Position numbers and translations under genes: made by a program
Notes under the pieces: model-generated
Seen by the model: only the letters and a program-made list of their open reading frames with translations
Told to the model about the DNA's origin: nothing
Database searches by the model: none
IMG/VR virus record: IMGVR_UViG_3300023181_000025
Location: 62,001-126,000 of that record
DNA length: 64,000 nt
Reading direction: 5' to 3' (one strand)
In this document: piece by piece, positions 22,119 to 36,434 of the stretch
Layout of the letters: every line of letters begins with the position of its first letter
How positions within the stretch are numbered: the first letter of the stretch is position 1

Positions 22119-23007
22119 TATAGTTATTTTTTGTTTTTAGAAGTATTTTCAAACCCTTTCTTTCCCAATACCTTAAATAATTAGAAAGCGTGGAATTTTC
22201 AGGATAATTGCCAAATTTTGCCTTTATAAAAGATTTAACGTTTATTATATAATATAATTTGTTTTCATAGTTTACAACATACCTAGGTCCATATTTGCAT
22301 TTTAACTTTTTTATAGAATTTATTCTTTTTTGCTTTGATTCTTCAGTATGATTTCTGCCATAAAATGGATTATTTTTACCTTCATAAATCCCAAGCTTTT
22401 TTTCGCGCATTATTATTTTGTCTTTTTTTGTATGTTTATAGCCCTTTGCCGGAGGAGTCACTTCCCCGGATTTAATTTTTTCTACATATTTAATTAGACT
22501 TTGTCGGCTTTTTTCTTTTGATTCTGGAGTTATTTTAGATAAATTATTTATGCTGGTCGCTATAGCCTTTTTACTGTTTTCACCGGTGTAAAAAGCTTTG
22601 AGTTTAAGTGATATTTTTTCTTTTGTAGAGACGCTTCTATGCTTTTCGAATAACTTAAAATCAGTTGGATCATTAAGAATATTGAAACCAAAATCTGGGA
22701 AAGAAGATTGGTAGAAATCTATCCAAAATTTTTCCATTTTAAGTAGATTCTCATATGTATAATTTTTTGCCCATTCTAATATTTCGATTATAAATTCTTC
22801 ATGTCCGAATTTATTCCAATAGTTTTGAAGATGTGCGTTGCCATGTAACTTTTTATTTAGTTGCTGAATATGCTCTTTTAACCTCCTAGATACATTAACT
22901 GAACTTCCTATATAAATTTTACCCGTAGGTATATGAGTTATTGAATAAATAGCCTTTTCATTTTTGTTGTATAACCCATAGCTTTTTATTAATTCTGTAG
23001 CTGTCAT
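22069..23007 (-). CDS. GIY-YIG homing endonuclease with NUMOD3-like repeats
   Basis: AIYSI....GKIYIGSS...RRL.EH; GYKHT, NPFYGRNHTEESK. Confidence 0.9.
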   Translation of the reverse strand: MTATELIKSYGLYNKNEKAIYSITHIPTGKIYIGSSVNVSRRLKEHIQQLNKKLHGNAHLQNYWNKFGHEEFIIEILEWAKNYTYENLLKMEKFWIDFYQSSFPDFGFNILNDPTDFKLFEKHRSVSTKEKISLKLKAFYTGENSKKAIATSINNLSKITPESKEKSRQSLIKYVEKIKSGEVTPPAKGYKHTKKDKIIMREKKLGIYEGKNNPFYGRNHTEESKQKRINSIKKLKCKYGPRYVVNYENKLYYIINVKSFIKAKFGNYPENSTLSNYLRYWERKGLKILLKTKNNYSASKFKMENVGYFEIN

Positions 23008-23411
23008 TTAGAAGCAAGAATTATAATAGAAAAAAGAACTAAGAAAAAAGAAAGAGTCCACCTAGTCTTTTCTTTTACGGAAAATTCATCCCAGCCTATG
23101 TTCATCATTGAACCGAAAAATATTCCAATAGTTTTTGGAAACACCACCCTTTTAACAACCCAAACAAGCGCCGACGCCACGGCAACATGAAGAGAAAGAG
23201 AGGCAATATCCACAAGTGTATAAGCTTCAGCAAGCCCAAACGCACCGTCTACCCATTTCGCCAAGAGTAAAACAAGGTAGAAAAATACCACACTCCCACC
23301 GGCGACAGCTAAGTCTTTAACAACCCCGTTTTGTTTCCCCTTTGTTTCAACAGCTACTTCGATCTTTTTTTCGACCTTTGCTTCTTCTTTTTTTTCTTCT
23401 AGAGTTTCCAT
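23004..23411 (-). CDS. membrane protein, holin candidate
   Basis: three hydrophobic segments, upstream of endolysin, preceded by AGTGTAA. Confidence 0.5.
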   Translation of the reverse strand: METLEEKKEEAKVEKKIEVAVETKGKQNGVVKDLAVAGGSVVFFYLVLLLAKWVDGAFGLAEAYTLVDIASLSLHVAVASALVWVVKRVVFPKTIGIFFGSMMNIGWDEFSVKEKTRWTLSFFLVLFSIIILASK

Positions 23412-23471
23412 AGTAAATTTATTTACACTAAAAATCTTGACATACTAGAAAAAGTTGATATATTCTTGCCC

Positions 23472-23831
23472 ATGATCTCTCCACTTAAACTTTATTTTTT
23501 AGTAATGTATAATCTTTCCGGCATTCAAAAGGGTATTCAGGCCGGTCATAGCGGATTAGAATATGCCAAAAAATATGGCGATACTCCTTTATATAAAGAA
23601 TTTATAGATAACCATAAAACATTCATTCTTTTAGACGGCGGCGGCTCAGAAGATATGGAGCAATATTTAAAATACATCGAAAGTTTGGGTGTTAATTATG
23701 CGGAGTTTCGAGAGCCCGACCTGAATAATTCAGTTTCCGCCATTGCATTTATCGTATCTGATGAGGAGAGGGAGAGTCCAGACAGTAAAATAGGTTTGTT
23801 CTTAAGTCATTTTAATTTTGCCCGCAATTAA
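23472..23831 (+). CDS. peptidyl-tRNA hydrolase Pth2-like protein
   Basis: LY.LV..NLSG.QKGIQAGH, FREPDLNN.V.AIA. Confidence 0.65.
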   Translation: MISPLKLYFLVMYNLSGIQKGIQAGHSGLEYAKKYGDTPLYKEFIDNHKTFILLDGGGSEDMEQYLKYIESLGVNYAEFREPDLNNSVSAIAFIVSDEERESPDSKIGLFLSHFNFARN

Positions 23832-23874
23832 TTACTGGAAACTTTAAAATTTTAGTGTAATATTAGCATACTAT

Positions 23875-23946
23875 GCGGGATTAACTCAGTGGTAGAGTGA
23901 CTCTTTTACAAGGAGTAGGTCGCAGGTTCGAACCCTGCATCTCGCA
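23875..23946 (+). tRNA. tRNA-Val(TAC)
   Basis: ACTCT-TTTACAA-GGAGT, canonical arms. Confidence 0.92.
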
Positions 23947-23951
23947 CATTA

Positions 23952-24022
23952 GGAACGTTTATATATGGGTATTGTAATAGCCTGTCGAGTTAGAGAAAGA
24001 GGTTCGGGTCTCCTACGTTCCG
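23952..24022 (+). tRNA. tRNA-Asp(GTC)
   Basis: GGAACGT/ACGTTCC-G, loop CTGTCGA; weak D and T arms. Confidence 0.7.
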
Positions 24023-24027
24023 CAACA

Positions 24028-24055
24028 AAAAGCCACTAATTACTTGGTGGCTTTT
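24028..24055. terminator. bidirectional intrinsic terminator
   Basis: AAAAGCCAC...GTGGCTTTT between convergent units. Confidence 0.75.
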
Positions 24056-24061
24056 AATGTT

Positions 24062-26209
24062 TTACAAGCTTTCTAGAAAGCTCCCCACCATTGGTGAGTA
24101 AGATGCATAGCCAGCTACATTAGGGTGTAGCCCATCTGAAGCATAATAACTGGCAATATTATAAGGATTCCATCCACTTTTTCGGTTTAAGTCCAAAACA
24201 GGAATTGAATAAGTCGCACAAGTTTGAATTATGGCATCCACAAATTGGCGTAGTGTGGCTCCATTACCGTTTACTGCCGATACACCTGCTCCGCTTCCGC
24301 CTGTAGCTGCCGCAGAGCGAGGGAGAGGCGTAGTAAATGCGACCCTTACTGTTGGTTTTTCTGTTAAAATAGCCTCTATCAGTCCCCTAACATCTCCATA
24401 GAAGGTTCCGGGACCGTTGTAAACACCATAACTAGCTGCTGGGCTAGCGGCATCGCCAAATGCCCCCAATGGCCTATTAAATCCCCAATCGTTTGTGCCT
24501 AACGCAACTACAGCCAAGTCTACTCCGGCTGCACCGGCTGTTGTAGCTACAGATGTAGGTGCAGATGTGATTCCAACGGCTGTTCCGGTAGATATAGAAA
24601 TATTTAAAGAGGAATCATTTACTAGTGCCGTTGTTGATGTAAGGGTAACCGTATCGCCAGACCCACCCACCGTAAATCTTGAAGTTATAGATGAATTAGC
24701 GGCCAATGCTGCTCGAACTTGCGCCATCCAAACTGATGGAGATCCAGTAGAAACTGCCACTGATACTGTCACTGGGGAAACAGGGATTTGAGAGCTAGTC
24801 ACCACAACAGAAGCATTTCCTGCGCTTGATACCGTCCCAATTCCAGTTGCGGTTGTAACTTGTAAAGTTCCCGATAGCGAGCCGGGTGTAATTGCTCCAA
24901 TTTTATGTCCCATTGATGATCCAGAAGTTCCGCTATCTAAGATCATAGAGCCTTCAAGATATCTTGTGGCCGCTTCTTTCCAACCTTCGGCATCGGTTAT
25001 ACTATCACCAATAAAGCCAAGACCTTTACCTTTCCAACGCTTGTTTATTGCGCCGGTAACTCCGAAATTACTAAAGAATAAAGGAAGAGTAGATCCATTA
25101 TAGACCCCCAATCTTTCGGCAACACTATTTAATACAGTCATTCTTGCATAAGCGGCCAAAGATGGAACAGTATATGGGGTATTACCCAATATAGATCCAG
25201 CTTGAGAAGTAGCCAGCCTATTAAAATTTAAATCATAGTAGACAATGCCAAACCCTGCTCCCGCAGCAGTTCCTTCACTCAATATAATTTGCTCTCCCGG
25301 AATAACGGGCATATAATTTGAAATAGAAAAAGAAGAACCGGCTGCTATCGTTCCCCCAGTGCTTAAGGTGAACCCAGAGATTATTCCAAATTTATTAAAT
25401 ATATTAGAAAAACCTCCTATTTCTCTAATTGCCTTTATATTTTGATCTCGATCTGACTGACTATCTATTAATTTAAATGAGGGTATAATTGAGGGTAATG
25501 TAGAACCATCTCCCACATACCAGCCTCTTATATTAACTCCTGCCGTTCCAATAGTAGAGCGCATAAAAAACGCTCCCGCTGGAACTGAAATAGGAGTATT
25601 GGCTGCAAAAGCAGCTATAGAAGATATAAATACTTTATTTGAATCATAAAATGCAGTTCCGCGAGTGGCATCGCTGAAAAATGCTTTGTTTGATATTACA
25701 GTCCCTCCCGGAGTAACGGGGATATAATCCGTTGATTGATATCCTGCGATTGTTTCCGTTGTTCCATTAGATTGTCTTATAAGAGTATTTTGCAATACTC
25801 TTGTTTCATCAAATCGGTTTTTTCCGACTGGAAAGGAGCGATTATCTATATCGGCTGAGGCCGCGACGATCAATGACGAAGATACGCCAGACTGGAACAG
25901 CCAAGCGGTTCCATTATCAATTAAATATCCATTTGATGTGACCGTAACTGCTGCGTCTGGATCAGTAAGTGTTCCGGTAACAGTTATATAATACCATCTT
26001 CCAGAGGTTCCCGGAGCAGGAATAGCTTGCCCAAGCGCCGTTATTTGGCCTTGGTATTTATTTGGGTCTAACCCTGAAAGTGCAGCACTTTGAATTGAGG
26101 AGATCGACGCAACCAACTCATTAAAATTGCTATTTGCTTTAGAAAAAGAATTTCTAATTGTGTCTCCGGTTCCATCATTCGCGGAAGCTCCTATATTAAT
26201 TGTTTGCAT
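24062..26209 (-). CDS. tail fibre/spike-like protein with SGNH (GDSL) esterase domain
   Basis: N-terminal INIG..ANDGTGD.IR..F.K.N.NF.EL; FIGDSIT, LGTND, DGLHPN..G. Confidence 0.8.
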   Translation of the reverse strand: MQTINIGASANDGTGDTIRNSFSKANSNFNELVASISSIQSAALSGLDPNKYQGQITALGQAIPAPGTSGRWYYITVTGTLTDPDAAVTVTSNGYLIDNGTAWLFQSGVSSSLIVAASADIDNRSFPVGKNRFDETRVLQNTLIRQSNGTTETIAGYQSTDYIPVTPGGTVISNKAFFSDATRGTAFYDSNKVFISSIAAFAANTPISVPAGAFFMRSTIGTAGVNIRGWYVGDGSTLPSIIPSFKLIDSQSDRDQNIKAIREIGGFSNIFNKFGIISGFTLSTGGTIAAGSSFSISNYMPVIPGEQIILSEGTAAGAGFGIVYYDLNFNRLATSQAGSILGNTPYTVPSLAAYARMTVLNSVAERLGVYNGSTLPLFFSNFGVTGAINKRWKGKGLGFIGDSITDAEGWKEAATRYLEGSMILDSGTSGSSMGHKIGAITPGSLSGTLQVTTATGIGTVSSAGNASVVVTSSQIPVSPVTVSVAVSTGSPSVWMAQVRAALAANSSITSRFTVGGSGDTVTLTSTTALVNDSSLNISISTGTAVGITSAPTSVATTAGAAGVDLAVVALGTNDWGFNRPLGAFGDAASPAASYGVYNGPGTFYGDVRGLIEAILTEKPTVRVAFTTPLPRSAAATGGSGAGVSAVNGNGATLRQFVDAIIQTCATYSIPVLDLNRKSGWNPYNIASYYASDGLHPNVAGYASYSPMVGSFLESL

Positions 26210-26224
26210 ATTAAATTATTTTTA

Positions 26225-26569
26225 TTAAGCCGCACTGGCTAAGATTGAGTTATTGTCGGCTGTGTATCGAGTTGTATCGGCTGTCCAGAAAGTAGTTATA
26301 ATAATAGGGTTACTTATTATTCCGTTTCCATCAACAACCGTTATTAAATCCCCCGACTTAATGGTATAAGGAATAACAAAGGTAGAATTAGTTGCGCCAA
26401 CAACATTAATTCCATTTATTTGCCATTGGTATGTGGAATTTCCACCAGAAACGGTTAATAATTCTCCCGGATTTGGATTTCCCGATATTGACAAAGGAAT
26501 TCCCGCTCCACCGCCCAAGTTAATTTTTACGGGGAAAATTGAAATTCTTAATTTACTTGTGCCAATCAT
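26225..26569 (-). CDS. virion-associated Ig-like protein
   Basis: YQWQ.NG..V.GAT.STF; TAD repeats. Confidence 0.5.
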   Translation of the reverse strand: MIGTSKLRISIFPVKINLGGGAGIPLSISGNPNPGELLTVSGGNSTYQWQINGINVVGATNSTFVIPYTIKSGDLITVVDGNGIISNPIIITTFWTADTTRYTADNNSILASAA

Positions 26570-26571
26570 CG

Positions 26572-26832
26572 TTATGCTTTATATGCAATAGCAACCCCAG
26601 AAGATAGAGTTATAGACAAAATTCTATATAAAGTAATTAAATCCCCGGCTTGGACTGTTTGTCCATTTAGATTTCCCTCAATTCTGTCTTCGCAAACCAT
26701 TGTTTGAATGTCGATATCAGAAACCGCCTTTAAAGCGAAATATGGACCGTTATGCTGGGCGGTATCCGTAATTATAACGGCCCCCTCAGCACCCAAAAGG
26801 ATCCCGGAATTGTTACTTGATGCGCTAATCAT
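26572..26832 (-). CDS. small putative virion protein
   Basis: C-terminal ITLSSG.AIAY; first gene after AGTGTAA motif. Confidence 0.5.
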   Translation of the reverse strand: MISASSNNSGILLGAEGAVIITDTAQHNGPYFALKAVSDIDIQTMVCEDRIEGNLNGQTVQAGDLITLYRILSITLSSGVAIAYKA

Positions 26833-26936
26833 ATCACTATTTACACTTTTTTGGTTGACTTTTTCTGAAAATGGTGTAGTTTTTCGACAAATGATAAATT
26901 TCTTGCTATTTTTTGAACCTGTGCTAAAATATTAAT

Positions 26937-27551
26937 ATGAAAGGTAAAATCCTAAAGCTCAATAAATACTATTTCCCCGTTTCAGTTTCTGATTATAAAG
27001 AAATTATAAAAAATATATTTAGCGAGGCAGTATACCCTATTGATATTGTATACGAATTAAACGAAGACGGATCTCCAAATATGGAGGAAATCGCCTATTT
27101 TCAACCAATTAAGACTTGGGATGAATGGTCTAAGTTAGAAATCCGCGATTTCGATGAGTCCATTAAAGGCGTCAAAGGTTCTTATAGAATGCCGTCTGTT
27201 GTAATTTGCGCTGACTACAGCAAGATTAAATGGAACAAAGTGGTCTTTCCGACGAAACAAAATATTTGGCAAAGAGACAACTATATTTGCCAATATACTG
27301 GAAAAAAATTAAATAAAGAAACCGTTACTGTTGACCATATTGTCCCAAAATCAAGGGGCGGAAAAGATTGTTGGTTTAATCTTGTTGCGGCGGACAGAGA
27401 AGTCAATAGGGTTAAAGCCGACAGAACTCCAGAGGAATGCGGACTTAAATTAATTAGACAGCCTTTTATTCCAAAAACAAACGCACTTTCTCTCACTTTT
27501 TTAGAAGCTCGTCCAGAATGGACCAAATTTATTCCAGAAAAAACAATGTAA
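26937..27551 (+). CDS. HNH endonuclease (McrA-like)
   Basis: NI..RD.Y.CQYTG, TVDHIVPKSRGG...W.NLV, N..KADRTPEE. Confidence 0.9.
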   Translation: MKGKILKLNKYYFPVSVSDYKEIIKNIFSEAVYPIDIVYELNEDGSPNMEEIAYFQPIKTWDEWSKLEIRDFDESIKGVKGSYRMPSVVICADYSKIKWNKVVFPTKQNIWQRDNYICQYTGKKLNKETVTVDHIVPKSRGGKDCWFNLVAADREVNRVKADRTPEECGLKLIRQPFIPKTNALSLTFLEARPEWTKFIPEKTM

Positions 27552-27558
27552 AGAAATT

Positions 27559-28194
27559 ATGAAAAAAGATTATACACATATAGCAATGGTAATTGATAGA
27601 AGCGGGTCTATGACCAGAGCGTGGAGCGATGTTTTAGGAGGTTACACACAATATATTGAAGACCAAAAGAAACAGGCGGGTAAATGTTCGCTAACAACTA
27701 CCGTTTTTGATACATCTATTGATGTAATTGAAGACTTTACAGATATTCAAGATGTTAATGTCGAATTAAACGCATTCCCTAGGGGCGGAACGGCTTTGTT
27801 GGACGCAATAGGAGTGACTATTTCTTCAGTTGGTAAAAAATTATCAAATCTGCCTGAAGAGGAAAGACCAGAAAAGGTTCTAATAATTGTTCAAACAGAT
27901 GGTCTGGAAAATGCAAGCAAAGAATACAGGGCTTATAGAATTAAAGAAATGATTAAAGAACAGGAAACAAAGTATAACTGGGAATTTTCTTTCATCGGAG
28001 CTTCATTAGAATCAGTTAATGCCGCAGAATCTTGGGGATTCAATAAAGATAATTCAGCCGTTTACTCCACCTCTAATTCGTTTGAAACGATGAGCCTCTT
28101 AAGTGAAAAAACATCAAATTATCGCTCAATGGAATGTTTGGAAAAATCATTCGCATATTCTACTGAAGAAAGATCTAAATTAGTTGAAAAATGA
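27559..28194 (+). CDS. vWA-domain protein
   Basis: DRSGSM, PRGGTALLDAIG, TDGLENASKEY. Confidence 0.88.
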   Translation: MKKDYTHIAMVIDRSGSMTRAWSDVLGGYTQYIEDQKKQAGKCSLTTTVFDTSIDVIEDFTDIQDVNVELNAFPRGGTALLDAIGVTISSVGKKLSNLPEEERPEKVLIIVQTDGLENASKEYRAYRIKEMIKEQETKYNWEFSFIGASLESVNAAESWGFNKDNSAVYSTSNSFETMSLLSEKTSNYRSMECLEKSFAYSTEERSKLVEK

Positions 28195-28437
28195 TTACAG
28201 TAAAAGAATTAATAAAAAAACTAGAAAATGAAGACCAGGAACGCGTCATTATTATGTCTCGCGATCCAGAAGGAAACAGCTACTCGCCTTTTGAAAATTT
28301 TTGGACAGGGGCTTATTCTGAAGAAGGTAGGGAAGCTGGCCTTGATCAATTAACTCAAGAGGATGAAGATTATGGATTCACGGAAGATGATATACTAGAA
28401 GGAACCCCGGCTTTAATTCTTCAACCGTCCTATTAAT

Positions 28438-28875
28438 ATGATTAAGAAAATTTTAAATTATGTAAGTTTTGTGTTATTTTTCTGGAAATTTAATGATGGT
28501 TTATCGCCTTCATTTAAACAGATGGGGATGTTTTCAGATTGTCAGGCTTCTCGCGAGAAGGTAGATCGTGTTTATTCGCGAAATTCGGGAGCAACGACTT
28601 TTTTATCAACTTATTCTGCGTGGTTGGCTGGAAGAGGCTTCAAGGTTGGGTTCTTTACCTCTCCCTATGGGAAGATGAAGTATTTCTCTGGTGTCGCTAA
28701 TATTAAAAATATTAAATCAGCGGGAGCATATGTTTTCCATACGCGGAAAATGGACGAAAAGGCGAAAGGATTGTCATTAGACTATATTATTGTTGACAAT
28801 ACTGAGGTAGACATCCCACTTATTTTAACTCTTAATGGCGCGGGCAAGAAATTGATTCGTATTGATACAATTTAA
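28438..28875 (+). CDS. short terminase-ATPase-like protein
   Basis: SRNSGATT (cf. gp17 SRQ.GKT), KGLSLDYIIVD. Confidence 0.4.
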   Translation: MIKKILNYVSFVLFFWKFNDGLSPSFKQMGMFSDCQASREKVDRVYSRNSGATTFLSTYSAWLAGRGFKVGFFTSPYGKMKYFSGVANIKNIKSAGAYVFHTRKMDEKAKGLSLDYIIVDNTEVDIPLILTLNGAGKKLIRIDTI

Positions 28876-28892
28876 GTGTAATTATAATTACT

Positions 28893-29060
28893 ATGATCAC
28901 TTCGATTCTTACCCTATTAGTTGTTTTCCTTTTACTTTATTTAGTATATTGGTGTGTTGGAAAGTTTATAAGTGGCACGCCATATCAAGTTGTGGGAATT
29001 ATATTGGCGATTGTTTTTATAATTTATGCCCTTAATTCTTTTGGAATAGCACTGCCGTAA
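28893..29060 (+). CDS. 55-aa two-helix membrane protein (absent from ORF track)
   Basis: MITSILTLLVVFLLLYLVYW...IILAIVFIIYAL; preceded by AGTGTAA. Confidence 0.7.
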   Translation: MITSILTLLVVFLLLYLVYWCVGKFISGTPYQVVGIILAIVFIIYALNSFGIALP

Positions 29061-29114
29061 AAATGCGGAGATTTATTTCTTCCCAAATACAAAAAATTGT
29101 GTAATAATACAAAC

Positions 29115-29244
29115 ATGAACTTAAGACAGTTACAACCGATTATTCTTCGCGAGTGGTATCCACTCGTTAAGGCGGTAATGTAAATATTTTTAGTTTAATT
29201 AAAATTTATATTAACCGCTTTTCTGTAAAGATTAGCGGTTTTTT
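29115..29244 (+). promoter_or_regulatory. attenuator-like unit: 22-aa leader ORF (29115-29183) + intrinsic terminator
   Basis: MNLRQLQPIILREWYPLVKAVM*; AACCGCT...AGCGGTT-TTTT; leader AAGGCGGTAA complements TTAACCGCTT. Confidence 0.55.
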
Positions 29245-29369
29245 GTTGGGTTTTTACAAGTTGCACCCGAAGCAATAAGCAGTCGCGGGAATGCGAGTTT
29301 GGTTCTAAAAGGGAACGGAAGGTTAAAGAAAATTATTGATAGGTTTAATACCCTGTCAATAAACATAAT

Positions 29370-29440
29370 ACGGTTATAGTTCAATGGTAGAACGACTGTC
29401 TCCAAAATAGTATATCAGGGTTCGATTCCTTGTAGCCGTG
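29370..29440 (+). tRNA. tRNA-Trp(CCA)
   Basis: ACGGTTA/TAGCCGT, loop CTCCAAA. Confidence 0.9.
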
Positions 29441-29591
29441 CATATATAAAATATTTTCAAGAAAAAAATTGACAAATTGTAATGTTTCAAGTATAGTATT
29501 TTTATGAATGAAGAACAAGCATACGAAAAGATACAGGATTTGATTGAACTAGCTAAGGAACTTATTGATTCCGGGCATTATACCTTCGAGG

Positions 29592-29671
29592 AAGTTGTTA
29601 ATGAGCTTTCTTGTTTGGAGTAACGCTAGACTATAGGCTTAGAAATTGCGGGTTTGAGTCCCGTCAACTTA
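29592..29671 (+). pseudogene. degenerate tRNA overlapping the end of a 39-aa ORF (29504-29623)
   Basis: AAGTTG/CAACTT, T-arm GCGGG-TTTGAGT-CCCGT. Confidence 0.35.
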
Positions 29672-29677
29672 ACATAA

Positions 29678-29749
29678 CGGAAATGGGCAGGCTGGGTATG
29701 CGACTTGTTTGGGGCAAGAACGAGATGATTTCGATTATCATATTTCCGA
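29678..29749 (+). tRNA. tRNA-Pro(TGG)
   Basis: CGGAAAT/ATTTCCG, loop TTTGGGG. Confidence 0.85.
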
Positions 29750-29752
29750 CAG

Positions 29753-29838
29753 TAGCTAGTAGCATAAAAGGGTAATGCGACTTACTTCGAAGATCTCGGG
29801 TAAGTGGATGAAGGAATTAATGCTACCTTCCTAGCTTG
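29753..29838 (+). ncRNA. tRNA-like RNA with extended anticodon arm and enlarged T-loop
   Basis: AGCTAG/CTAGCT, GCAT/ATGC, ACTTAC-14 nt-GTAAGT, GAAGG-11 nt-CCTTC. Confidence 0.6.
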
Positions 29839-29898
29839 TGTTTTTGATAGAAAACAACTTGACGAATCCAATAAATTCGCTAAGATGGTTTCAACAAA

Positions 29899-29972
29899 GC
29901 GCCGTTAGCTCAGCGGTTAGAGCGGTCCGACTCTAAATTGGATTGTCGGGGTTTCGAATACCTCACGGCGCA
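29899..29972 (+). tRNA. amber suppressor tRNA (anticodon CTA)
   Basis: GCGCCGT/ACGGCGC, canonical D/T arms, TCCGA-CTCTAAA-TTGGA. Confidence 0.88.
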
Positions 29973-30185
29973 CTTTTGACTTAAAAGAAAACATGGTGAC
30001 TAAATGATTATTGTCATGGTTAAGCTAGAAAATACTGCTAGCAGATTATTTAGAGTGATGCGATAGCTTAGCAAGCTGAGATTATTCAAGGGTTGACAAC
30101 AGTTGCCTGATAATCTCAAATATCTAAAGAAAGTTAAAATATTTTCACTTTTTTCTTCCAAAATCTAAACTTTTAGTGTAAATAT

Positions 30186-30362
30186 ATGAAGCCAAAAATG
30201 ATTACAAGAGTTACAGCAACAGAATTTGAAACCGATGATGGAGTTATCCATGATATTCCGTTTGAATTAGATGAAGTTCCAACAGTTGAGGATTTTCAAC
30301 GAATCTATGACGAATGGTTCAGATTATTTCAACAGAAAGGATTGATAGACAAAAATGGATAA
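30186..30362 (+). CDS. 58-aa acidic protein at IS left end (absent from ORF track)
   Basis: MKPKMITRVTATEFETDDG...; stop overlaps tnpA start. Confidence 0.6.
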   Translation: MKPKMITRVTATEFETDDGVIHDIPFELDEVPTVEDFQRIYDEWFRLFQQKGLIDKNG

Positions 30363-30987
30363 AAAGATTCTATCAATTAGTGATGCTGCATCTATCTTAG
30401 GCGTTTCTGATGAAACTCTTAGAAATTGGGAAAGAGAAGGCAAAGTGATCCCATTTCATACGGAAGGTGGCCATAGACGCTATTATAGAACCGATATTGA
30501 GAAGTTGGCAGGAATCTATGTAGAAACTGTTAAAGAGTCTAGTGGTAAGCGTGTGGGTATCTATTGCCGTGTTAGCTCACATGAGCAGAAGACCAAAGGT
30601 GATTTAGAAAGACAGGTTGGCAGAATGACTACAGAGGCACTAAAACGTGGTTATTCTATTGTTGCGGTTTTTGATGAGGTAGGTTCAGGAATGAACGACA
30701 ATAGGAAGAAATTACAGAAACTTTTTGAATTGGTTGAGAAGAAAGAAATTGATGTAGTCTTAATCGAACATAAAGATAGATTGTCAAGGTTTTGTTTTAA
30801 TTATCTATTATCTTATTTTAATTCCTATGGGGTTAGAATTGAAAAAGTTGAAGAGGTAATGAGTAAGAGTTTCGAGAATGAACTCGTAGAAGATATTTTG
30901 TCTTTGATGGCTAGTTTTTCTGCTAAAATCTATGGACGTAGAAGTTCGCAGAATCGAAAGAAGAAAGAAAAGGAGGAACCAGAATGA
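30355..30987 (+). CDS. tnpA: IS607 serine-recombinase transposase
   Basis: MerR HTH (TLRNWE.EGK, GGHRRY), YCRVSS..QK.DL.RQ, KDRLSRF, ELVED, FSAKIYGRRS. Confidence 0.95.
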   Translation: MDKKILSISDAASILGVSDETLRNWEREGKVIPFHTEGGHRRYYRTDIEKLAGIYVETVKESSGKRVGIYCRVSSHEQKTKGDLERQVGRMTTEALKRGYSIVAVFDEVGSGMNDNRKKLQKLFELVEKKEIDVVLIEHKDRLSRFCFNYLLSYFNSYGVRIEKVEEVMSKSFENELVEDILSLMASFSAKIYGRRSSQNRKKKEKEEPE

Positions 30988-31691
30988 GACAGGAAATTTT
31001 ATATGGCGACTGTTTAGAGCTATTAAAAAACATTCCTGATAAATCAATTGATTTCATTTGTATTGACCCGCCATACGGTTTAACCGCTCCGAAATGGGAT
31101 TCTATTGTTTCTTTTGATTTTTTATGGGCTGAATTTAATAGAATTGGCAAAAATGGATATGTCGCGGCTATATTTGGCTGTCAACCATTCACTACGAAAG
31201 TTATTTGCTCTAATATAGAACAATTTAAATATTGTTGGTATTGGAATAAAAACCAAGGAACAAATTTCTTTCATGCCAAGAGAATGCCAATTAGAAAAGT
31301 TGAAGAAATATCTATTTTTGGCGGCAAAACATATAATCCACAAATTACGGATGGGCATATTCCTACCAATTCTGCTAAAGGCTGCTCCAACGGAAAAGCA
31401 TATCATGGAACCAATACGCGAAATTACGAAGGTGGGAAAACAACGCGATTTCCTGACAATATTTTAAATTTTAAATGCGTGGATAATTATTCGAGAGTTC
31501 ATTCCAGTCAAAAACCAGTTGAGCTTTTGGAGTATCTTATCAATACATATACTAATGAGAATGATGTTGTTTTGGATAGCTTTGCTGGTTCAGGCTCAAC
31601 TTTAGTAGCGGCAAAAAATCTCAATCGTCAATTCATAGGTATCGAAAAAGAAAAAGAATATTATTATATTTGTTTAGAAAGATTGAAATGA
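30984..31691 (+). CDS. N6-adenine/N4-cytosine DNA methyltransferase (beta class)
   Basis: DPPY precedes H..QKP..LL and VLDSFAGSGST. Confidence 0.92.
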   Translation: MRQEILYGDCLELLKNIPDKSIDFICIDPPYGLTAPKWDSIVSFDFLWAEFNRIGKNGYVAAIFGCQPFTTKVICSNIEQFKYCWYWNKNQGTNFFHAKRMPIRKVEEISIFGGKTYNPQITDGHIPTNSAKGCSNGKAYHGTNTRNYEGGKTTRFPDNILNFKCVDNYSRVHSSQKPVELLEYLINTYTNENDVVLDSFAGSGSTLVAAKNLNRQFIGIEKEKEYYYICLERLK

Positions 31692-32908
31692 TTTTACGCG
31701 CATACAAAACCGAGATTAGTGTTAATAACAAGCAACAAACCTTGTTATTGCAACATATCGGTTGTGCAAGATGGGCATATAATTGGGCATTAGCTAAAAA
31801 GAAAGAACAATTCGATAAAAAAGAAAAGATTCCTAATGCTATTGAACTTCATAGGGAATTAAACAAGTTAAAACAGTCGGAAGTTCCTTGGATGTATAAT
31901 TCAAGTAAGACTTCTCCACAAAATGCACTTAGAGATTGCGATAAGGCATTTCAAAATTTTTTCGCTCGTTGTAAGAGAAAAGTCAAAGGCAAGAAAGGAT
32001 TTCCTAAATTTAAATCCAAAAAGAACGAAAAACAGTCGTTTAGATTAGACGGAGCAATTTCAGTAGAGTCTGATTGTATTAAATTGCCACGAATCGGTAA
32101 ACTTAGATTAGCCGAGAAAGATTATATTCCCACTGATTGTAAAATACTATCTGCTACCGTCTCTAAACGAGCGGACAAATGGTTTATATCTATTCAAGTA
32201 GAAACGCCTGACAGAGAGCATCTTGACGCTAAGAACGAGGTAGTAGGAATTGATTTGGGAATTAAAACTTTGGCTACTTGTTCTGATGGAGCCATTTATG
32301 AAAATCCAAAAGCCTTAAAGAAAAATCTTAAAAGACTAAAACGTAAACAAAAACAATTAAGCAGAAAGAACAAGGGAATCAAAAACTATGGAAAAGTAAA
32401 ACAAAAATTAGCAAAATTACATTATCACATATCAAACATTCGTAAAGATTGCTTACATAAAATCACTTCTAAAATTATAGACGAAAACCAAGTCGTAGTT
32501 TTGGAAGATTTGAAAGTAAGCAATATGATGAAAAATCACTGTTTGGCGCAAGCTATCAGTGATGTTGGATTATTTGAATTTCGTCGTCAGATAGAATATA
32601 AAGCAAAATGGAATGGAAGAAAAGTTATCTTCGCGGATACCTTCTTTGCTTCCAGTAAGACTTGTAGCTGTTGCGGATGGAAAAATTCAGATTTGAAGTT
32701 GACAGATAGAATATTTGACTGTAAGATGTGTGATAATAAAATGGATAGAGATTTAAATGCAAGTTTGAATCTAAAACAAATTTATAGGGAAAGTTCTTCC
32801 CGAATTGACGCTTCTGGAGATGGGAGTTCATCAAACGCAAGTTTGGTTAGCCCGTCGTTGAACGAAGAATTTAACAAAAAATCGAGAGTTTATGTCCTAA
32901 AAAGATGA
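31688..32908 (+). CDS. tnpB: RNA-guided endonuclease TnpB
   Basis: RuvC GIDLG / VLEDL / DRDLNA intact; SSKTCSCCG...C..C zinc ribbon. Confidence 0.95.
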   Translation: MILRAYKTEISVNNKQQTLLLQHIGCARWAYNWALAKKKEQFDKKEKIPNAIELHRELNKLKQSEVPWMYNSSKTSPQNALRDCDKAFQNFFARCKRKVKGKKGFPKFKSKKNEKQSFRLDGAISVESDCIKLPRIGKLRLAEKDYIPTDCKILSATVSKRADKWFISIQVETPDREHLDAKNEVVGIDLGIKTLATCSDGAIYENPKALKKNLKRLKRKQKQLSRKNKGIKNYGKVKQKLAKLHYHISNIRKDCLHKITSKIIDENQVVVLEDLKVSNMMKNHCLAQAISDVGLFEFRRQIEYKAKWNGRKVIFADTFFASSKTCSCCGWKNSDLKLTDRIFDCKMCDNKMDRDLNASLNLKQIYRESSSRIDASGDGSSSNASLVSPSLNEEFNKKSRVYVLKR

Positions 32909-33147
32909 CTTTAGATTTTTGTAAGTTTAAAAGAACGGTGTTAAGTAAATTTTCTTGAGAATCGTTTAAGTTAAAATTTTATAAAAACATGAAGAAGAAA
33001 ACGGTAATTATAACTGATCCAAAAGAAATTACCCGCATTTGTTTAAATCAGCCAGCGGTTTCTGGTGAACGAATGAAGCAATCAATAATTTCACAAAACA
33101 AAAAAAATAAAATGAATACACATACGTAGGTTGAATTAAAAGAAGCA

Positions 33148-33681
33148 ATGGCCAATACGAAACAGACTGCAACACAATCTGTTTTAGAGCATGGAGAAAG
33201 TGTTTGGAAATACACCCAAAGAATCTTAAAACAAGATTTCGAAGGGATGAAAATTCCAAATTGGCTAAAAGATAATTTTGGAGAGATTATTAGCAATCTT
33301 CATTATCCAAAAACTATACAGGAGTATAACGAACTTCACGATTGCGGGAAACCGTATTGTCTTGAAGTTGATTCTGATGGCAAGAGGCATTTTCCAAATC
33401 ACGCCGAGGTTTCAAAGCGAGTTTATTTAAACTTGCCGGGAGCTAACAGTATAGTCGGCAACCTAATTGGTTTGGATATGATTTTTCATACATTTACTGC
33501 CGAAGAAATTACGGCGCTCAACCTATCAAAGCGAGACTCTTATACCTTGTTGGTAACAGCCTTGTCAGAAATACACAGTAACGCGGAAATGTTTGGAGGA
33601 ATTGAAAGTGTTTCTTTCAAACAAAAATGGAAAAAGCTTGATCGGCGCGGCAATATGATTATGAAGGGAGGCGCAGAATGA
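33148..33681 (+). CDS. HD-domain phosphohydrolase
   Basis: VLEHG, LHDCGKP, HFPNHAEVS. Confidence 0.7.
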   Translation: MANTKQTATQSVLEHGESVWKYTQRILKQDFEGMKIPNWLKDNFGEIISNLHYPKTIQEYNELHDCGKPYCLEVDSDGKRHFPNHAEVSKRVYLNLPGANSIVGNLIGLDMIFHTFTAEEITALNLSKRDSYTLLVTALSEIHSNAEMFGGIESVSFKQKWKKLDRRGNMIMKGGAE

Positions 33682-33992
33682 AAAGATATATGTATGTTGC
33701 CGTAAGGCAAGATATAAGCGGACCCCAGCAAGTAGTTCAGGCATGTCACGCGGCGATTGAAGCTAGTTGGACATATCATTTTGATGGATTTGAACACCCG
33801 TCTGTGATAGTTTTAGGAATGAAAAGCGAAAAAGATCTTAATAAGTTCACGAAATATCTTGACACTTTGGAGTTTGTCCATTATGACGAATTTCGTGAAC
33901 CGGATAGAGATAATGAACTGACAGCAGTTGCAACTGTTGCTATCGGAGAAGAATATAAACACTTATTTAAAAAATATCAATTGTTAAAGTAA
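33678..33992 (+). CDS. second Pth2-like protein
   Basis: MYVAVRQDIS..QQVVQACHA, FREPD..NELTAVA. Confidence 0.7.
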   Translation: MKRYMYVAVRQDISGPQQVVQACHAAIEASWTYHFDGFEHPSVIVLGMKSEKDLNKFTKYLDTLEFVHYDEFREPDRDNELTAVATVAIGEEYKHLFKKYQLLK

Positions 33993-34053
33993 ATATTTTT
34001 GGTTATTTTGACTTATAAAATGACCGGCCCTAATGAAAAGTTAAGGCGTCAAT

Positions 34054-34125
34054 GCTGCCGTCTTCTACTGGCTAGGAAAGCAGGCTTTCAACCTGAAAAA
34101 GGCGGATCGTAACCGCTCGGCAGCA
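34054..34125 (+). tRNA. tRNA-Glu(TTC)
   Basis: GCTGCCG/CGGCAGC, loop CTTTCAA. Confidence 0.88.
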
Positions 34126-34127
34126 CT

Positions 34128-34199
34128 TTTAATGTAATATAAGATAGCATCCCCTGCAATTGTGGCGGGGTTGTTCTGGTTCAAATCCAGACATTAAAT
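34128..34199 (+). ncRNA. tRNA-like RNA with non-canonical anticodon loop
   Basis: TTTAATG/CATTAAA, TCTGG-TTCAAAT-CCAGA, CCTGC-AATTGTG-GCGGG. Confidence 0.6.
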
Positions 34200-34204
34200 C
34201 ATTA

Positions 34205-34291
34205 GCGTTGGTTGGGGATATTGGTAGTCCTCGCGGAGCTGTAACCTCCGAAACTAATAATTCATTGGACGTTCGATTCGTCTCCAGCGCA
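34205..34291 (+). tRNA. tRNA-Tyr(GTA)
   Basis: CGGAG-CTGTAAC-CTCCG, long variable region. Confidence 0.88.
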
Positions 34292-34294
34292 CTG

Positions 34295-34540
34295 GTAATT
34301 TTAAGGAGGTTGGCTTAGAAGTAGCAATCCTTTAAAAAGTAGAATCTATTCTCCGAATGACCGTAGTAACAACTTGAAGAGAAAATAGAGTTGCGAACGC
34401 TAAACGTAAGCTAGGACTAGGGAGGTAAATCAATATGAGGTTGTAAGAACCTATGAATTGACATAGGCATATCGTGCGGCACTCCGTAATTGGTAAGGCT
34501 GCAAACCGTTCTTTTGGTGTAAAAACATACTTTTAATTAC
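34295..34540 (+). ncRNA. 23S rRNA GTPase-centre (H43/H44, uL11-binding) mimic with ~170-nt insert
   Basis: GGAGGTTGGCTTAGAAGTAGCAATCCTTTAAAAAGT ... GTGTAAAAACATACT, closed by GTAATT/AATTAC. Confidence 0.75.
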
Positions 34541-34572
34541 AAATTGAAACAATAAAATTTATTGTTTCAAAA

Positions 34573-34645
34573 GGCTCGTTGGTGAAATTGGATATCACTC
34601 CAGATTACGACTCTGAGGTTCCTGATTCGAGTTCAGGGCGGGCTA
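34573..34645 (+). tRNA. tRNA-Arg(ACG)
   Basis: loop TTACGAC. Confidence 0.88.
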
Positions 34646-34848
34646 CATGAATAACATTCCAAGAAGAAATGATATGAGCCAATGGGTTGAGGCTGAGGGA
34701 TTGATTTTTGATGCCCTTGTAGGGGTTGAATCTATGGGCGCAGACCCATTGCTGACAGATGCGGTTGTTTTGCTTGAGAAAGCGAGAAGTAAAGTGGCGG
34801 ATTATGTTGACAAGATGAATGAAATATTGTAACTTATAAAGAACATTA

Positions 34849-34922
34849 GCCGTGTTAGCTCAATTGGATAGAGCAGGAGGTTTCTACCCTCAAGGTTATG
34901 GGTTCGAGTCCCTTATGCGGCA
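34849..34922 (+). tRNA. tRNA-Arg(TCT)
   Basis: loop TTTCTAC, canonical arms. Confidence 0.9.
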
Positions 34923-34974
34923 CTTTAAAACATTTTTCTGAGTTCGAATCTCAGGTTGTCTATAGGAATAAAAA

Positions 34975-35256
34975 ATGAAATTACCAGTTCTATATGATGA
35001 GATTCCACCAAAAGAACGGTGGAAAGTTAGAGAAGAATATATCAAAGTTCAAGACGGTCTATGTCAACATTGCAAAAACCCCTTAGTGGGACTAGCTTCG
35101 ACAGAAGTAATGAGTAAAAAAATAAATTTAAACTTATTTCCTGAAGCATTTCTAGATCATCCAATCCATCTTCATCATTGCCATAAAACAGGCTTGACTA
35201 TTGGGGCTGTTCATGCTAGATGTAATGCAGTTTTGTTTCAGTATTATGGAGAATAA
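34975..35256 (+). CDS. endonuclease VII/HNH-like small nuclease
   Basis: Q.GLC.HC, HLHHCH.TG...G.VH.RCN. Confidence 0.7.
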   Translation: MKLPVLYDEIPPKERWKVREEYIKVQDGLCQHCKNPLVGLASTEVMSKKINLNLFPEAFLDHPIHLHHCHKTGLTIGAVHARCNAVLFQYYGE

Positions 35257-35682
35257 AAAAATAGATAACTTTCCTTTTGTTCCTGTTTTCTTTACGGAGG
35301 AAGAGGCAGAATTAGTTGATTGGGATGCAGTTTTTTCTGACGGTTTATTTGATGCACTTCAAACCAACAAAAATTTCAATAAAGATTTTGGAGGCAACTT
35401 TGTTGATAAAAATATGAAAATTTGTGGAAAAATAAGCGCACAAAAGACTAAAAAAAGATTTGAAAAAGGTTAATTACATACAGTGTCATCTCCAGAAGGG
35501 CGATAAACATCACATGGCGTGGATTCCTGAAAAGTTTGCCGTTATTGGAAAATTTATTAAAATTCATGAGGATGATGGTTGGGAAGTAAAAGGTGATGGC
35601 GGCGGAGGCAAAATAACCGCTAAAGAAGCCGATGAACTTTCCCAACTTTATAAGAAAACAAGAAAAGCTTCCGATATTTAAT

Positions 35683-36087
35683 ATGAACGAAAAAACTAAA
35701 CTATATTGCTTTCAAAAGGAAATAGTAGAACTAATAAATTCAAATAAAGACTCCCGAATTTTGGTTCTTATGGCTAGAGGCGGCGGGAAATCATTTTTAT
35801 TTGATTGGCTGACGCCAATAAAGGCAAGGAAGGAAAACGGCATTAGTCGATTTGCAAAATTCAACGGGACAACATTTATTGATGAAGTTGTTGATGAATA
35901 TTTACCTGAGAACCCGGTAGTTGTTTTTTCTTCTTATAGCGAATTATTGGATTATGGAGAATTTGATTTGATAATTAAGTTTGATATTAATAGGATATCA
36001 AGGGAATTATTTAACTTTTACGACAAAGATTTGGTAAAGTTTGTTCCCGAAGATGTTTATAGAAGAGATTTTTTGTGTAGAAAATAA
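35683..36087 (+). CDS. short terminase/SF2-ATPase-like protein
   Basis: LY.FQ.EI, MARGGGKS, FIDE. Confidence 0.45.
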   Translation: MNEKTKLYCFQKEIVELINSNKDSRILVLMARGGGKSFLFDWLTPIKARKENGISRFAKFNGTTFIDEVVDEYLPENPVVVFSSYSELLDYGEFDLIIKFDINRISRELFNFYDKDLVKFVPEDVYRRDFLCRK

Positions 36088-36092
36088 AATTT

Positions 36093-36186
36093 GATATCCA
36101 TTAGTAATAATGCCGAGCGGTGCGGAGGACGCTCTATTGCGTCGGAACCTGAAGAACAATAAACCGGCAAAATCTCAGGGGATATT
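36093..36186 (+). ncRNA. structured RNA with glycine-aptamer-like motifs
   Basis: GATATCC/GGATATT; GCGGAGGA, CCTGAAGAACAA, AAATCTCAGG. Confidence 0.35.
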
Positions 36187-36193
36187 TTTTAAA

Positions 36194-36269
36194 TGTGGAA
36201 TAGCTTAGCCCGGTTAAAGCCCGCGACTGATAATTGCGAGATCGTTCGGTTCAAATCCGACTTCCACAA
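36194..36269 (+). tRNA. tRNA-Ile(GAT)
   Basis: CGCGA-CTGATAA-TTGCG. Confidence 0.88.
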
Positions 36270-36270
36270 C

Positions 36271-36341
36271 TGCCCTTTAGTTTAATGGTAAAACTACACG
36301 TTTTGAGCGTGTCTTTCTCGGTTCGAGTCCGGGCGGGGCTT
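36271..36341 (+). tRNA. tRNA-Gln(TTG)
   Basis: ACACG-TTTTGAG-CGTGT. Confidence 0.88.
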
Positions 36342-36434
36342 CATAAATAAATAACCCGAGCGAGGGCTGATATCCAAGATGCCGAATCTCTACCTGTGCC
36401 AACGGGTAAGTTCTAAATTCAGAATTTATTTATA

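What the first reader, a model, noticed from the sequence alone, without database searches (positions are those of the whole stretch)
29899..29972. Amber suppressor tRNA in a genome that is not recoded
Seen: a well-formed tRNA with anticodon CTA and its own sigma70-like promoter (TTGACG about 29859). Genes read intact in code 11 and nearly all stops I checked are TAA/TGA (TAG at 18412, 20550, 33129). Inference: selective read-through of a few phage genes, interference with host TAG termination, or an early step towards recoding.
Basis: partly seen in the sequence, partly recalled or inferred. Interest (0 to 1): 0.6.

Follow-up and report, generated by a model that had tools for sequence, protein, structure and literature searches.

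The report
Lysine-type amber suppressor tRNA, jumbo phage
A 211-kb soil (leaf-litter) phage that uses the ordinary genetic code carries a well-formed tRNA that should read the UAG stop codon, built on a lysine-tRNA body; this situation is already documented in other large phages, so it is a nice but not a surprising example.

Summary
The tRNA at 29899-29972 is real (Rfam 57.4 bits, anticodon CUA) and sits in a ~20-tRNA array of a complete 211-kb standard-code jumbo phage from leaf litter. Genome-wide tests confirm no recoding: TAG closes 15 of 349 predicted genes, and there are no in-frame TAGs in 155 homology segments covering 103 genes. The genome has no release factor, no LysRS/GlnRS/PylS-type synthetase and no flanking ribozyme. 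TAG rarity (4%) is shared with two close relatives that lack the suppressor, so it is a lineage trait. The tRNA body is lysine-type: 119 of 120 bacterial tRNAs with the same acceptor stem, A73 and D-arm frame read Lys codons. It differs by U36A, a compensatory T-stem swap and a rare extra nucleotide that gives a 6-bp anticodon stem. It is not cargo of the adjacent IS607-like element. Only one TAG (outside the window) looks premature relative to 60 homologues, and support for read-through there is statistically weak. Amber suppressors in standard-code phages are already published (XacN1; Borges et al.), and I found 80 more in IMG/VR, with none of the 51 testable loci locally recoded. Verdict: a genuine feature and a new member of a known kind. 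The lysine-type body and stem architecture are the only unusual points.

The parts
29899..29972 (+). Amber suppressor tRNA, anticodon CUA. It has a tRNA-Lys-type body, A73, no encoded CCA (only C74), a 6-bp anticodon stem with a 4-nt variable loop, and a U53:A61 pair.
   Evidence: ARAGORN; Rfam 57.4 bits; alignment A1; bacterial tRNA census
29859..29886 (+). Sigma70-like hexamer pair TTGACG-16-TAAGAT, 12 nt upstream of the tRNA. Weak, and not above chance.
   Evidence: 9/12 match; 9 sites found against 6.5 +/- 2.6 in shuffles
29469..29497 (+). Stronger sigma70-like site TTGACA-17-TATAGT upstream of tRNA-Pro. A possible shared promoter for tRNA-Pro and the suppressor.
   Evidence: 11/12 match; this motif class is enriched upstream of genes genome-wide
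16560..36342 (+). tRNA array holding the suppressor: 18 ARAGORN tRNAs plus two further Rfam tRNA hits (19855-19932, 21083-21168), all on the + strand, interspersed with small ORFs, HNH endonucleases and an IS.
17726..18412 (+). Phage CCA-adding enzyme (tRNA nucleotidyltransferase), needed because no tRNA gene here encodes a full CCA. It ends in TAG, which is a genuine stop.
   Evidence: Pfam PF01743 and PHROG 2244; G001 homologue ends 2 aa before the TAG; 3' ends of the tRNA genes
30089..32939 (+). IS607-like element (TnpA serine recombinase 30355-30987, DNA methylase 30984-31691, TnpB 31688-32908). It is a neighbour of the tRNA, not its carrier: its left end lies 116 bp downstream of the tRNA.
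   Evidence: Pfam; boundaries from blastn to independent IMG/VR copies, none of which has a CUA tRNA in the upstream sequence fetched

Best explanation
This is a structurally intact, phage-encoded amber suppressor that arose from a tRNA-Lys(CUU)-type gene by a U36-to-A change. Inferred steps: it is transcribed with the neighbouring tRNAs of the array, has its 3' end completed by the phage (or host) CCA-adding enzyme, and is charged by a host synthetase. That synthetase is most likely LysRS (U35, A73 and A31-U39 are present), with GlnRS as the known competitor for CUA anticodons. It then competes with RF1 at UAG, giving partial read-through in the infected cell. The A36-A37-A38 loop is the favourable context for amber suppressors and for i6A37 modification (my own knowledge). 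The phage can afford this because its lineage was already TAG-poor: 15 of 349 stops, none in the structural or replication blocks, with a median of 6 codons to the next stop. So this is the 'suppressor present, code still standard' state already described for other large phages. Its pay-off is not shown. The likeliest are host-directed read-through and/or tolerance of occasional in-frame TAGs, such as the one candidate at genome 203636. Shown here: the tRNA, its lysine-type ancestry, the standard code, and the low exposure of the phage to UAG read-through. Inferred: expression, charging, suppression and benefit.
For: The tRNA is real and well folded, and the identical sequence occurs in a second sample. 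Lysine-type body: 24 of 31 phage-database matches are annotated tRNA-Lys, best 79.7% to a Lys(CUU). Of 120 bacterial tRNAs with the same acceptor stem, A73 and D-arm frame, 119 have Lys anticodons. The compensatory G53:C61 to U53:A61 change keeps the T-stem paired. Identity elements are taken from PMC1483225. Standard code. No code-change partners: no RF domain and no class II, class Ic or PylS-type synthetase. Low cost. CCA completion is needed and the enzyme is present. Precedents: XacN1 has two CUA suppressors in a standard-code genome with no read-through targets found, and Borges et al. describe a suppressor in a standard-code relative. I found 80 CUA tRNAs in 72 IMG/VR contigs, with 0 of 51 loci locally recoded.
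Against: There is no expression, charging or suppression data; no RNA run holds the phage. A36 removes one LysRS identity element. The extra nucleotide and the U53:A61 pair are atypical and could impair function. No orthologue exists in any collection searched, so conservation and covariation cannot be assessed. The claimed private promoter is not above chance.
Confidence: 0.55

Rival explanations
1. Incipient recoding with a dedicated target. The TAG at genome 203636-203638 (L009:8636-8638) is a sense codon decoded by this tRNA, giving a 202-aa protein instead of the 119-aa product. The phage would then be at the very first step of TAG reassignment, possibly to lysine.
For: All 60 homologues with the SDG..W motif continue at least 20 residues past it (median 39), whereas here TAG comes two codons after it. 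The TAG column is Glu/Asp in 49 of 60 homologues (GAG to TAG is one change), and the next column is Gly in 51 of 60 and in this phage too. The frame stays open for 82 codons with positive coding score. The post-TAG peptide fits the family's helix pattern by eye. The subclade is TAG-poor, as the Borges model requires.
Against: The post-TAG segment adds only 1.5 bits to the family HMM; 12% of shuffles and 17% of unrelated peptides do as well. AlphaFold gives a confident core that ends before the TAG, with pLDDT about 51-66 for the post-TAG helix and below 50 for the rest. The distal extension matches no homologue tail and coincides with an independently callable ORF that has its own ATG. This is one case among 15 TAG genes, and chance in-frame continuation is expected about once. 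A recent nonsense mutation in an accessory gene explains it equally well.
Confidence: 0.17
2. Neutral or decaying gene: a tRNA-Lys(CUU) copy whose anticodon mutated. It is poorly charged or poorly used by the ribosome and persists only because it is harmless in a TAG-poor phage.
For: It is unique to this genome; four relatives lack it and there is no orthologue elsewhere. It has lost U36, a LysRS determinant. It has an atypical extra nucleotide, seen in 0 of 120 bacterial tRNA-Lys and 1 of 76 other phage suppressors, and a non-canonical 53:61 pair.
Against: The cloverleaf is fully paired and scores 5th of the 15 Rfam hits in the window. The T-stem change is compensatory. It is not a recent paralogue of any tRNA in this phage (about 70% at best), so it has survived considerable divergence with its structure intact. 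Diverse CUA tRNAs recur in many large phages, which argues for selection on the class.
Confidence: 0.18
3. Not primarily a decoder. The lysine-shaped tRNA could act as a decoy or neutraliser for host defences that target tRNA-Lys (PrrC-type anticodon nucleases, PARIS). Alternatively, its C34 could be modified, for example by the phage's TilS-like PP-loop enzyme, so that it reads something other than UAG.
For: tRNA-Lys is a frequent target of such defences, and phage tRNA variants are known to counter them (titles and abstracts of PMC10264068 and PMC11464382). The phage encodes a TilS-like PP-loop ATPase.
Against: There is no direct evidence here. A CUA anticodon cannot replace cleaved tRNA-Lys in decoding. 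The TilS-like gene sits next to a tRNA(CAU) 80 kb away, which is its obvious substrate. Lysidine at C34 would make the tRNA read UAA, which is the phage's main stop codon.
Confidence: 0.05

Closest known systems
CUA suppressor tRNAs of Xanthomonas jumbo phage XacN1 (PMC5852040)
   Same: A cultured jumbo phage with the standard code and a large tRNA array that includes CUA suppressors. It has few TAG stops (18), and in-silico read-through found no target genes. This is the same situation as here.
   Different: XacN1 has two copies, located in long terminal repeats, and a high-GC host. The isoacceptor ancestry and stem architecture of its suppressors were not compared here.
Suppressor tRNAs of TAG-recoded (code 15) phages: crAss-like, Lak and others (Borges et al., 10.1101/2021.08.26.457843; PMC9523058)
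   Same: A phage-encoded CUA tRNA in a low-GC, TAG-poor lineage. The published model places suppressor acquisition before in-frame stops appear, and reports a standard-code relative that carries a suppressor.
   Different: Those phages have many in-frame TAGs in late and lysis genes, read TAG as Gln, sometimes encode RF2, and often have theta ribozymes beside the tRNA. Here there are 0 in-frame TAGs in 103 genes with homologues (one uncertain candidate), no RF, no ribozyme, and a Lys-type rather than Gln-type body.
Bacterial and phage tRNA-Lys(CUU)
   Same: Identical acceptor stem GCGCCGU/ACGGCGC, A73, the D-arm, A31-U39 and the CU-NNN-AA loop. The nearest sequence is 85% identical (L163); Mycobacterium phage Whirlwind tRNA-Lys(CUU) is 79.7% identical.
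   Different: A36 instead of U36, U53:A61 instead of G53:C61, and one extra nucleotide 5' of the anticodon stem (74 nt against 73 nt).
Laboratory amber suppressors charged by LysRS or GlnRS in E. coli (PMC1483225 and work cited there)
   Same: A CUA anticodon with U35 is recognised by both LysRS and GlnRS, and A31-U39 tips the balance towards lysine. This tRNA has U35, A73 and A31-U39.
   Different: Those are engineered tRNAs tested in E. coli. Here the host and its synthetases are unknown and nothing has been measured.

Membership tests
Elongator tRNA (Rfam RF00005) | Cloverleaf scoring above the family gathering threshold, with G18G19 and a T-loop UUCGAAU | tested here: met
   57.4 bits against a 29-bit cut-off; cloverleaf drawn by ARAGORN
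Elongator tRNA (Rfam RF00005) | Canonical G53:C61 pair and 5-bp anticodon stem | tested here: not met
   U53:A61, and one extra nucleotide giving a 6-bp stem with a 4-nt variable loop. These are deviations, not disqualifying ones.
Amber suppressor tRNA | Anticodon CUA in a 7-nt loop with U33 and a purine at 37 | tested here: met
   Loop is C-U-CUA-A-A
Amber suppressor tRNA | The tRNA is aminoacylated and inserts an amino acid at UAG in vivo | not testable with these tools
   No RNA runs hold the phage. An amber reporter and a charging assay are needed.
tRNA-Lys isoacceptor class | Body (acceptor stem, A73, D-arm frame) characteristic of tRNA-Lys | tested here: met
   119 of 120 bacterial tRNAs with this frame have CTT or TTT anticodons; 24 of 31 phage-database hits are annotated tRNA-Lys
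tRNA-Lys isoacceptor class | LysRS identity set U34/U35/U36 plus A73 (E. coli; PMC1483225) | tested here: inconclusive
   U35, A73 and A31-U39 are present. C34 occurs naturally in CUU isoacceptors. U36 is replaced by A36.
Gln-type suppressor as used in code-15 phages | GlnRS identity set U1-A72, G2-C71, G3-C70, G10, Y34, U35, G36, A37, U38, G73 | tested here: not met
   Present: G3-C70, G10, C34, U35, A37. Absent: U1-A72 (G1-C72 here), G2-C71 (C2-G71 here), G36, U38 (A38 here), G73 (A73 here).
tRNA-Pyl (ARAGORN's label) | 6-bp anticodon stem, 3-nt variable loop, 5-nt D-loop without G18G19, one base between the acceptor and D stems, and a pylS gene in the genome | tested here: not met
   Only the 6-bp stem matches. 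The variable loop is 4 nt, the D-loop is 8 nt with GG, there are two linker bases, and the T-loop is canonical. There is no tRNA-synt_2d / PylS-type domain in the genome.
TAG-recoded (code 15) phage | In-frame TAG codons in conserved genes, and a clear gain in coding density when TAG is read as sense | tested here: not met
   0 TAGs in 155 homology segments covering 103 genes. TAG-sense gain in ORF coverage is +3.7 points, below the TGA-sense and TAA-sense controls. One uncertain candidate.
TAG-recoded (code 15) phage | Accessory code-change parts: RF2, a cognate synthetase, a theta ribozyme next to the suppressor | tested here: not met
   No PF00472, PF00152, PF00749 or PF01409 domains in the six-frame genome search. 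No ribozyme within 29400-30400.
Standard-code phage carrying a suppressor tRNA (XacN1-like state) | Phage genome in code 11, a suppressor within a large tRNA array, and no demonstrable read-through target | tested here: met
   precedent
IS607 cargo | The tRNA lies inside the element boundaries and travels with other copies | tested here: not met
   Element is window 30089-32939; the tRNA ends at 29972. None of the copies in L073-L081 has a CUA tRNA in the upstream sequence fetched.

The most novel reading that the evidence does not exclude
The phage is caught at the first codon of a TAG reassignment that uses lysine rather than glutamine. On this reading, a lysine-bodied suppressor whose extra nucleotide lengthens the anticodon stem to 6 bp (as in the natural stop-codon readers tRNA-Sec and tRNA-Pyl) decodes the single premature TAG in the gene at genome 203279-203887, restoring the C-terminal part that all 60 motif-bearing homologues possess.
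Probability: 0.12. Interest if true: 0.7.

Novelty: new member of a known kind. Interest (0 to 1): 0.35.

Why it matters
Suppressor tRNAs in standard-code phages are proposed as the entry point to stop-codon recoding, but few have been dissected. This one gives a clean, complete genome in which three things can be stated. The code is still standard. TAG depletion came before the tRNA, because relatives without it are equally TAG-poor. The suppressor derives from tRNA-Lys rather than tRNA-Gln. If it proved to be charged with lysine, it would show that the choice of glutamine in known recoded phages is not the only route. The rare 6-bp anticodon stem is a testable variable for suppression efficiency. 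Otherwise the finding is an ordinary instance of a published phenomenon.

Tried and rejected
1. tRNA as cargo of the adjacent IS607-like element: rejected. The element boundaries are 30089-32939, and other copies have no CUA tRNA in the upstream sequence fetched.
2. TAG purged because of the tRNA: rejected. G001 and G002 lack the tRNA and have the same TAG share (p=0.59).
3. Backup stops or selected extensions after TAG: none; the distribution matches TAA/TGA.
4. Second gene with the same TAG-GGA-C context (genome 179968-180264): a genuine stop, because the homologue ends at the same place.
5. HNH gene at 188147-188764, which has a 49-codon extension: no homology beyond the TAG, and the extension runs antisense through tRNA-Leu.
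6. Post-TAG homology in the 203279 gene: the HMM gain is not significant, the fold is not decisive, and Foldseek against the PDB gives nothing.
7. Orthologues of the tRNA: none in IMG/VR by exact pattern, in four related phage records, or in metagenome contigs other than the source contig. The E. coli collection gave nothing useful.
8. Megablast of the region against cultured phages: no match.
9. Expression: no RNA runs. The laid runs were contigs only and showed the same genotype with no variants.
10. Host: there is no Shine-Dalgarno signal, sigma70-type promoters are enriched and the Bacteroidota -7 motif is not, so the host is undetermined.
11. An apparent TAA-split gene at genome 52140/52155 turned out to be an N-terminal alignment over-extension.
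12. The high GC of the tRNA as a sign of recent transfer: it is only the top of the array's range, 0.39-0.57.

Full report
**What is there.** ARAGORN finds 18 tRNAs in the window, all on the + strand between 16.5 and 36.3 kb. One is a 74-nt tRNA with anticodon CTA at 29899-29972. Rfam's tRNA model scores it 57.4 bits against a 29-bit cut-off, fifth best of the 15 Rfam hits in the window, and adds two further tRNA hits at 19855-19932 and 21083-21168. The window is bases 62001-126000 of a single 211,168-bp contig with 37.5% GC and a ~130-bp terminal direct repeat, so the genome is complete. It encodes a large terminase, a DnaE-like polymerase and glycosyltransferases, but has no close cultured relative: polymerase identity is 31% or less. 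Sequencing runs place it in leaf-litter metagenomes. A second sample has a contig identical across 29660-30241, so the CUA anticodon is not an artefact of one assembly. An 11/12 site lies upstream of the preceding tRNA-Pro.

**Is the genome recoded? No.** A simple codon-model gene caller gives 349 genes covering 89% of the genome, with stops TAA 222, TGA 112 and TAG 15. Reading TAG as sense increases long-ORF coverage less than reading TGA or TAA as sense. As a direct test, I called proteins from the two closest uncultured relatives (G001 and G002, 59% polymerase identity) and aligned them to this genome. The 155 segments cover 103 genes and contain no in-frame TAG. The genome has no release-factor domain, no class II (LysRS-type), class Ic (GlnRS-type) or PylS-type synthetase domain. 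There is no HDV-like or other ribozyme beside the tRNA. None of the accessory parts of published code-change modules is present.

**TAG usage.** TAG makes up 4.3% of stops here, 5.4% in G001 and 4.7% in G002, and neither relative has a suppressor (p=0.59). More distant relatives G003 (complete) and G004 also lack a suppressor and use TAG for 9.4% and 11.9% of stops (subclade against outgroup p=4e-4). So TAG depletion is a lineage trait that came before the tRNA, not a response to it. Eleven of the 15 TAG-terminated genes lie among small genes at 172-211 kb, and none lies in the structural or replication blocks. The distance to the next in-frame stop is the same after TAG (median 6 codons) as after TAA or TGA (7 and 6.5; p=0.85). 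There is therefore no sign of backup stops or of selected extensions.

**What kind of tRNA is it?**
- It is not a recent copy of any other tRNA in the phage (about 70% identity at best); the phage's own tRNA-Lys(UUU) is very different.
- Against annotated phage genomes, 24 of 31 full-length matches are tRNA-Lys. The best is a Lys(CUU) at 79.7%.
- I scanned one genome per bacterial species for tRNAs with exactly this acceptor stem, A73 and D-arm frame and a CU-NNN-AA loop, leaving the anticodon free. The body is therefore lysine-type.
- Relative to its nearest match (85%), it differs by U36 to A, a compensatory G53:C61 to U53:A61 swap, and one extra nucleotide 5' of the anticodon stem.
- ARAGORN draws that extra base as a sixth G.U pair with a 4-nt variable loop, and this model is 1.5 kcal/mol better than the 5-bp alternative. 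The insertion is rare: 0 of 120 bacterial tRNA-Lys and 1 of 76 other phage CUA tRNAs have it.
- ARAGORN's 'Pyl' label only reflects the anticodon. The D-loop, T-loop, linker and variable loop are not those of tRNA-Pyl.

**Which amino acid?** PMC1483225 lists the E. coli identity sets. For Lys these are U34, U35, U36 and A73, with A31-U39 favouring LysRS. For Gln they are U1-A72, G2-C71, G3-C70, G10, Y34, U35, G36, A37, U38 and G73. The paper shows that LysRS and GlnRS compete for CUA suppressors through U35. This tRNA has U35, A73 and A31-U39. It lacks U1-A72, G2-C71, U38 and G73. Lysine is therefore the more likely charge and glutamine the alternative. This is inference for an unknown host. 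From my own knowledge, A37-A38 after the anticodon is the efficient context for amber suppressors, and A36-A37-A38 is the MiaA (i6A37) motif. Both follow automatically from U36A in a Lys loop. None of the 18 tRNA genes encodes more than C74. A phage CCA-adding enzyme lies in the array at 17726-18412, which fits a self-contained tRNA maturation set.

**Neighbourhood.** Downstream lies an IS607-like element: a MerR-HTH serine-recombinase TnpA, an N6/N4 DNA methylase and a TnpB. Independent copies in other viral contigs (80-90% TnpB identity) define its ends sharply at window 30089 and 32939. The tRNA ends 116 bp before the left end, and no other copy has a CUA tRNA in the upstream sequence fetched. 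The tRNA is a neighbour of the element, not its cargo.

**Is there a read-through target?**
- For 14 of the 15 TAG genes there is nothing. The CCA-adding enzyme's homologue ends 2 residues before the TAG. The gene at 179968-180264 ends where its only homologue ends.
- The exception lies outside the window, at genome 203279-203638 (L009:8279-8638). All 68 homologues start at the same Met.
- In all 60 homologues with the C-terminal SDG..W motif, the protein continues at least 20 residues beyond it (median 39). Here TAG comes two codons after it.
- The TAG column is Glu or Asp in 49 of 60 homologues. The next column is Gly in 51 of 60, and is Gly here too.
- The frame then stays open for 82 codons with good coding score.
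- Against this, adding the post-TAG peptide raises the family-HMM score by only 1.5 bits (p about 0.12-0.17).
- AlphaFold places the confident core entirely before the TAG, with the post-TAG helix at pLDDT about 51-66 and the rest below 50.
- The distal extension matches no homologue tail and overlaps an ORF with its own ATG.
- A recent nonsense mutation that trims a variable tail explains the data as well as suppression does. I record it as a lead, not as evidence.

**How common is this?** One restrictive pattern (this D-arm type plus a CUCUAAA loop) finds 80 CUA tRNAs in 72 IMG/VR contigs, many on 150-580-kb contigs. None is closer than 81% to this one. None of the 51 loci of at least 6 kb looks locally TAG-recoded, though a local test cannot exclude late-gene recoding elsewhere in those genomes. 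In the literature, the cultured standard-code jumbo phage XacN1 has two CUA suppressors, and in-silico read-through of its 18 TAG stops found nothing (PMC5852040). Atu_ph07 has a UCA suppressor (PMC6102473). Borges et al. report a suppressor in a standard-code relative of recoded phages and propose the sequence low GC, rare stop, suppressor, then in-frame stops. A review mentions host-directed read-through as an anti-defence idea.

**Verdict.** The most likely account is a functional, low-cost, lysine-type amber suppressor in a TAG-poor phage, which is an already described state. The benefit is undemonstrated. The unusual details are the lysine ancestry and the 6-bp anticodon stem, plus one uncertain premature TAG. 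I rate it a new member of a known kind, of modest interest.

Noticed in passing
window 30089-32939: IS607-like element (TnpA serine recombinase, DNA methylase, TnpB) with sharply defined ends. Copies at 66-91% nucleotide identity occur in at least 8 other IMG/VR phage contigs. The methylase segment (about 31040-31508) is divergent in some copies and absent in L077/L078, so it behaves as variable cargo.
   Followed up: partly
window 16560-36342 (all 18 tRNA genes): Every tRNA gene encodes the discriminator base plus a single C and then diverges, so none carries a full CCA. A short (228 aa) phage CCA-adding enzyme lies inside the array at 17726-18412.
   Followed up: partly
genome 171668-173002 (outside the window; L007:11668-13002): A tRNA with anticodon CAT is followed about 660 bp later by a 198-aa PP-loop ATPase (PF01171, the TilS N-terminal type). 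This may be a phage tRNA-Ile2 plus lysidine synthase pair.
   Followed up: no
genome 203279-203887 (L009:8279-8887): A member of an uncharacterised protein family (68 homologues, motifs MGYTHYW..FNG.GEDGHETF..FCKT..KPYD..SDG..W, no Pfam match, no PDB fold match) is cut by a TAG two codons after the last conserved motif, where all 60 motif-bearing homologues continue at least 20 residues.
   Followed up: yes
window 33678-33992: A 104-aa ORF just before tRNA-Glu gives a weak, sub-threshold match to peptidyl-tRNA hydrolase PTH2 (E 5.6e-4, 20.5 bits against a 23-bit cut-off).
   Followed up: no
window 19855-19932 and 21083-21168: Two Rfam tRNA hits that ARAGORN missed. The second is an 86-nt class II tRNA that passes the tRNA-Sec model (52 bits against 47) but looks by eye like a Ser-type tRNA. 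Neither was typed.
   Followed up: no
whole genome (G000): There is no Shine-Dalgarno enrichment upstream of the 349 genes (leaders are A/T-rich). TTGAC[AG]-N16-18-TAnnnT pairs are enriched upstream of genes (10% against 1% in coding background), while the Bacteroidota -7 motif is not. The host phylum is unresolved.
   Followed up: partly
L104:872-949 (IMGVR_UViG_3300001199_000039): This is the only other phage CUA tRNA found with the same extra nucleotide before the anticodon stem. It also has a Lys-type anticodon arm (GCCGA/UCGGC) and sits in a 66% GC contig that also carries a second CUA tRNA.
   Followed up: no
L016 and L017 (match 10001-13464): The DnaE-like polymerase of the two closest relatives spans about 950 nt more than in this phage and the other relatives. 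This suggests an insertion (an intein or a homing element) in their polymerase gene.
   Followed up: no
window 24062-27551: A 715-aa tail-fibre-like gene on the minus strand and an HNH endonuclease (26937-27551) are embedded in the tRNA array. The array region is a mosaic of mobile and accessory genes.
   Followed up: no
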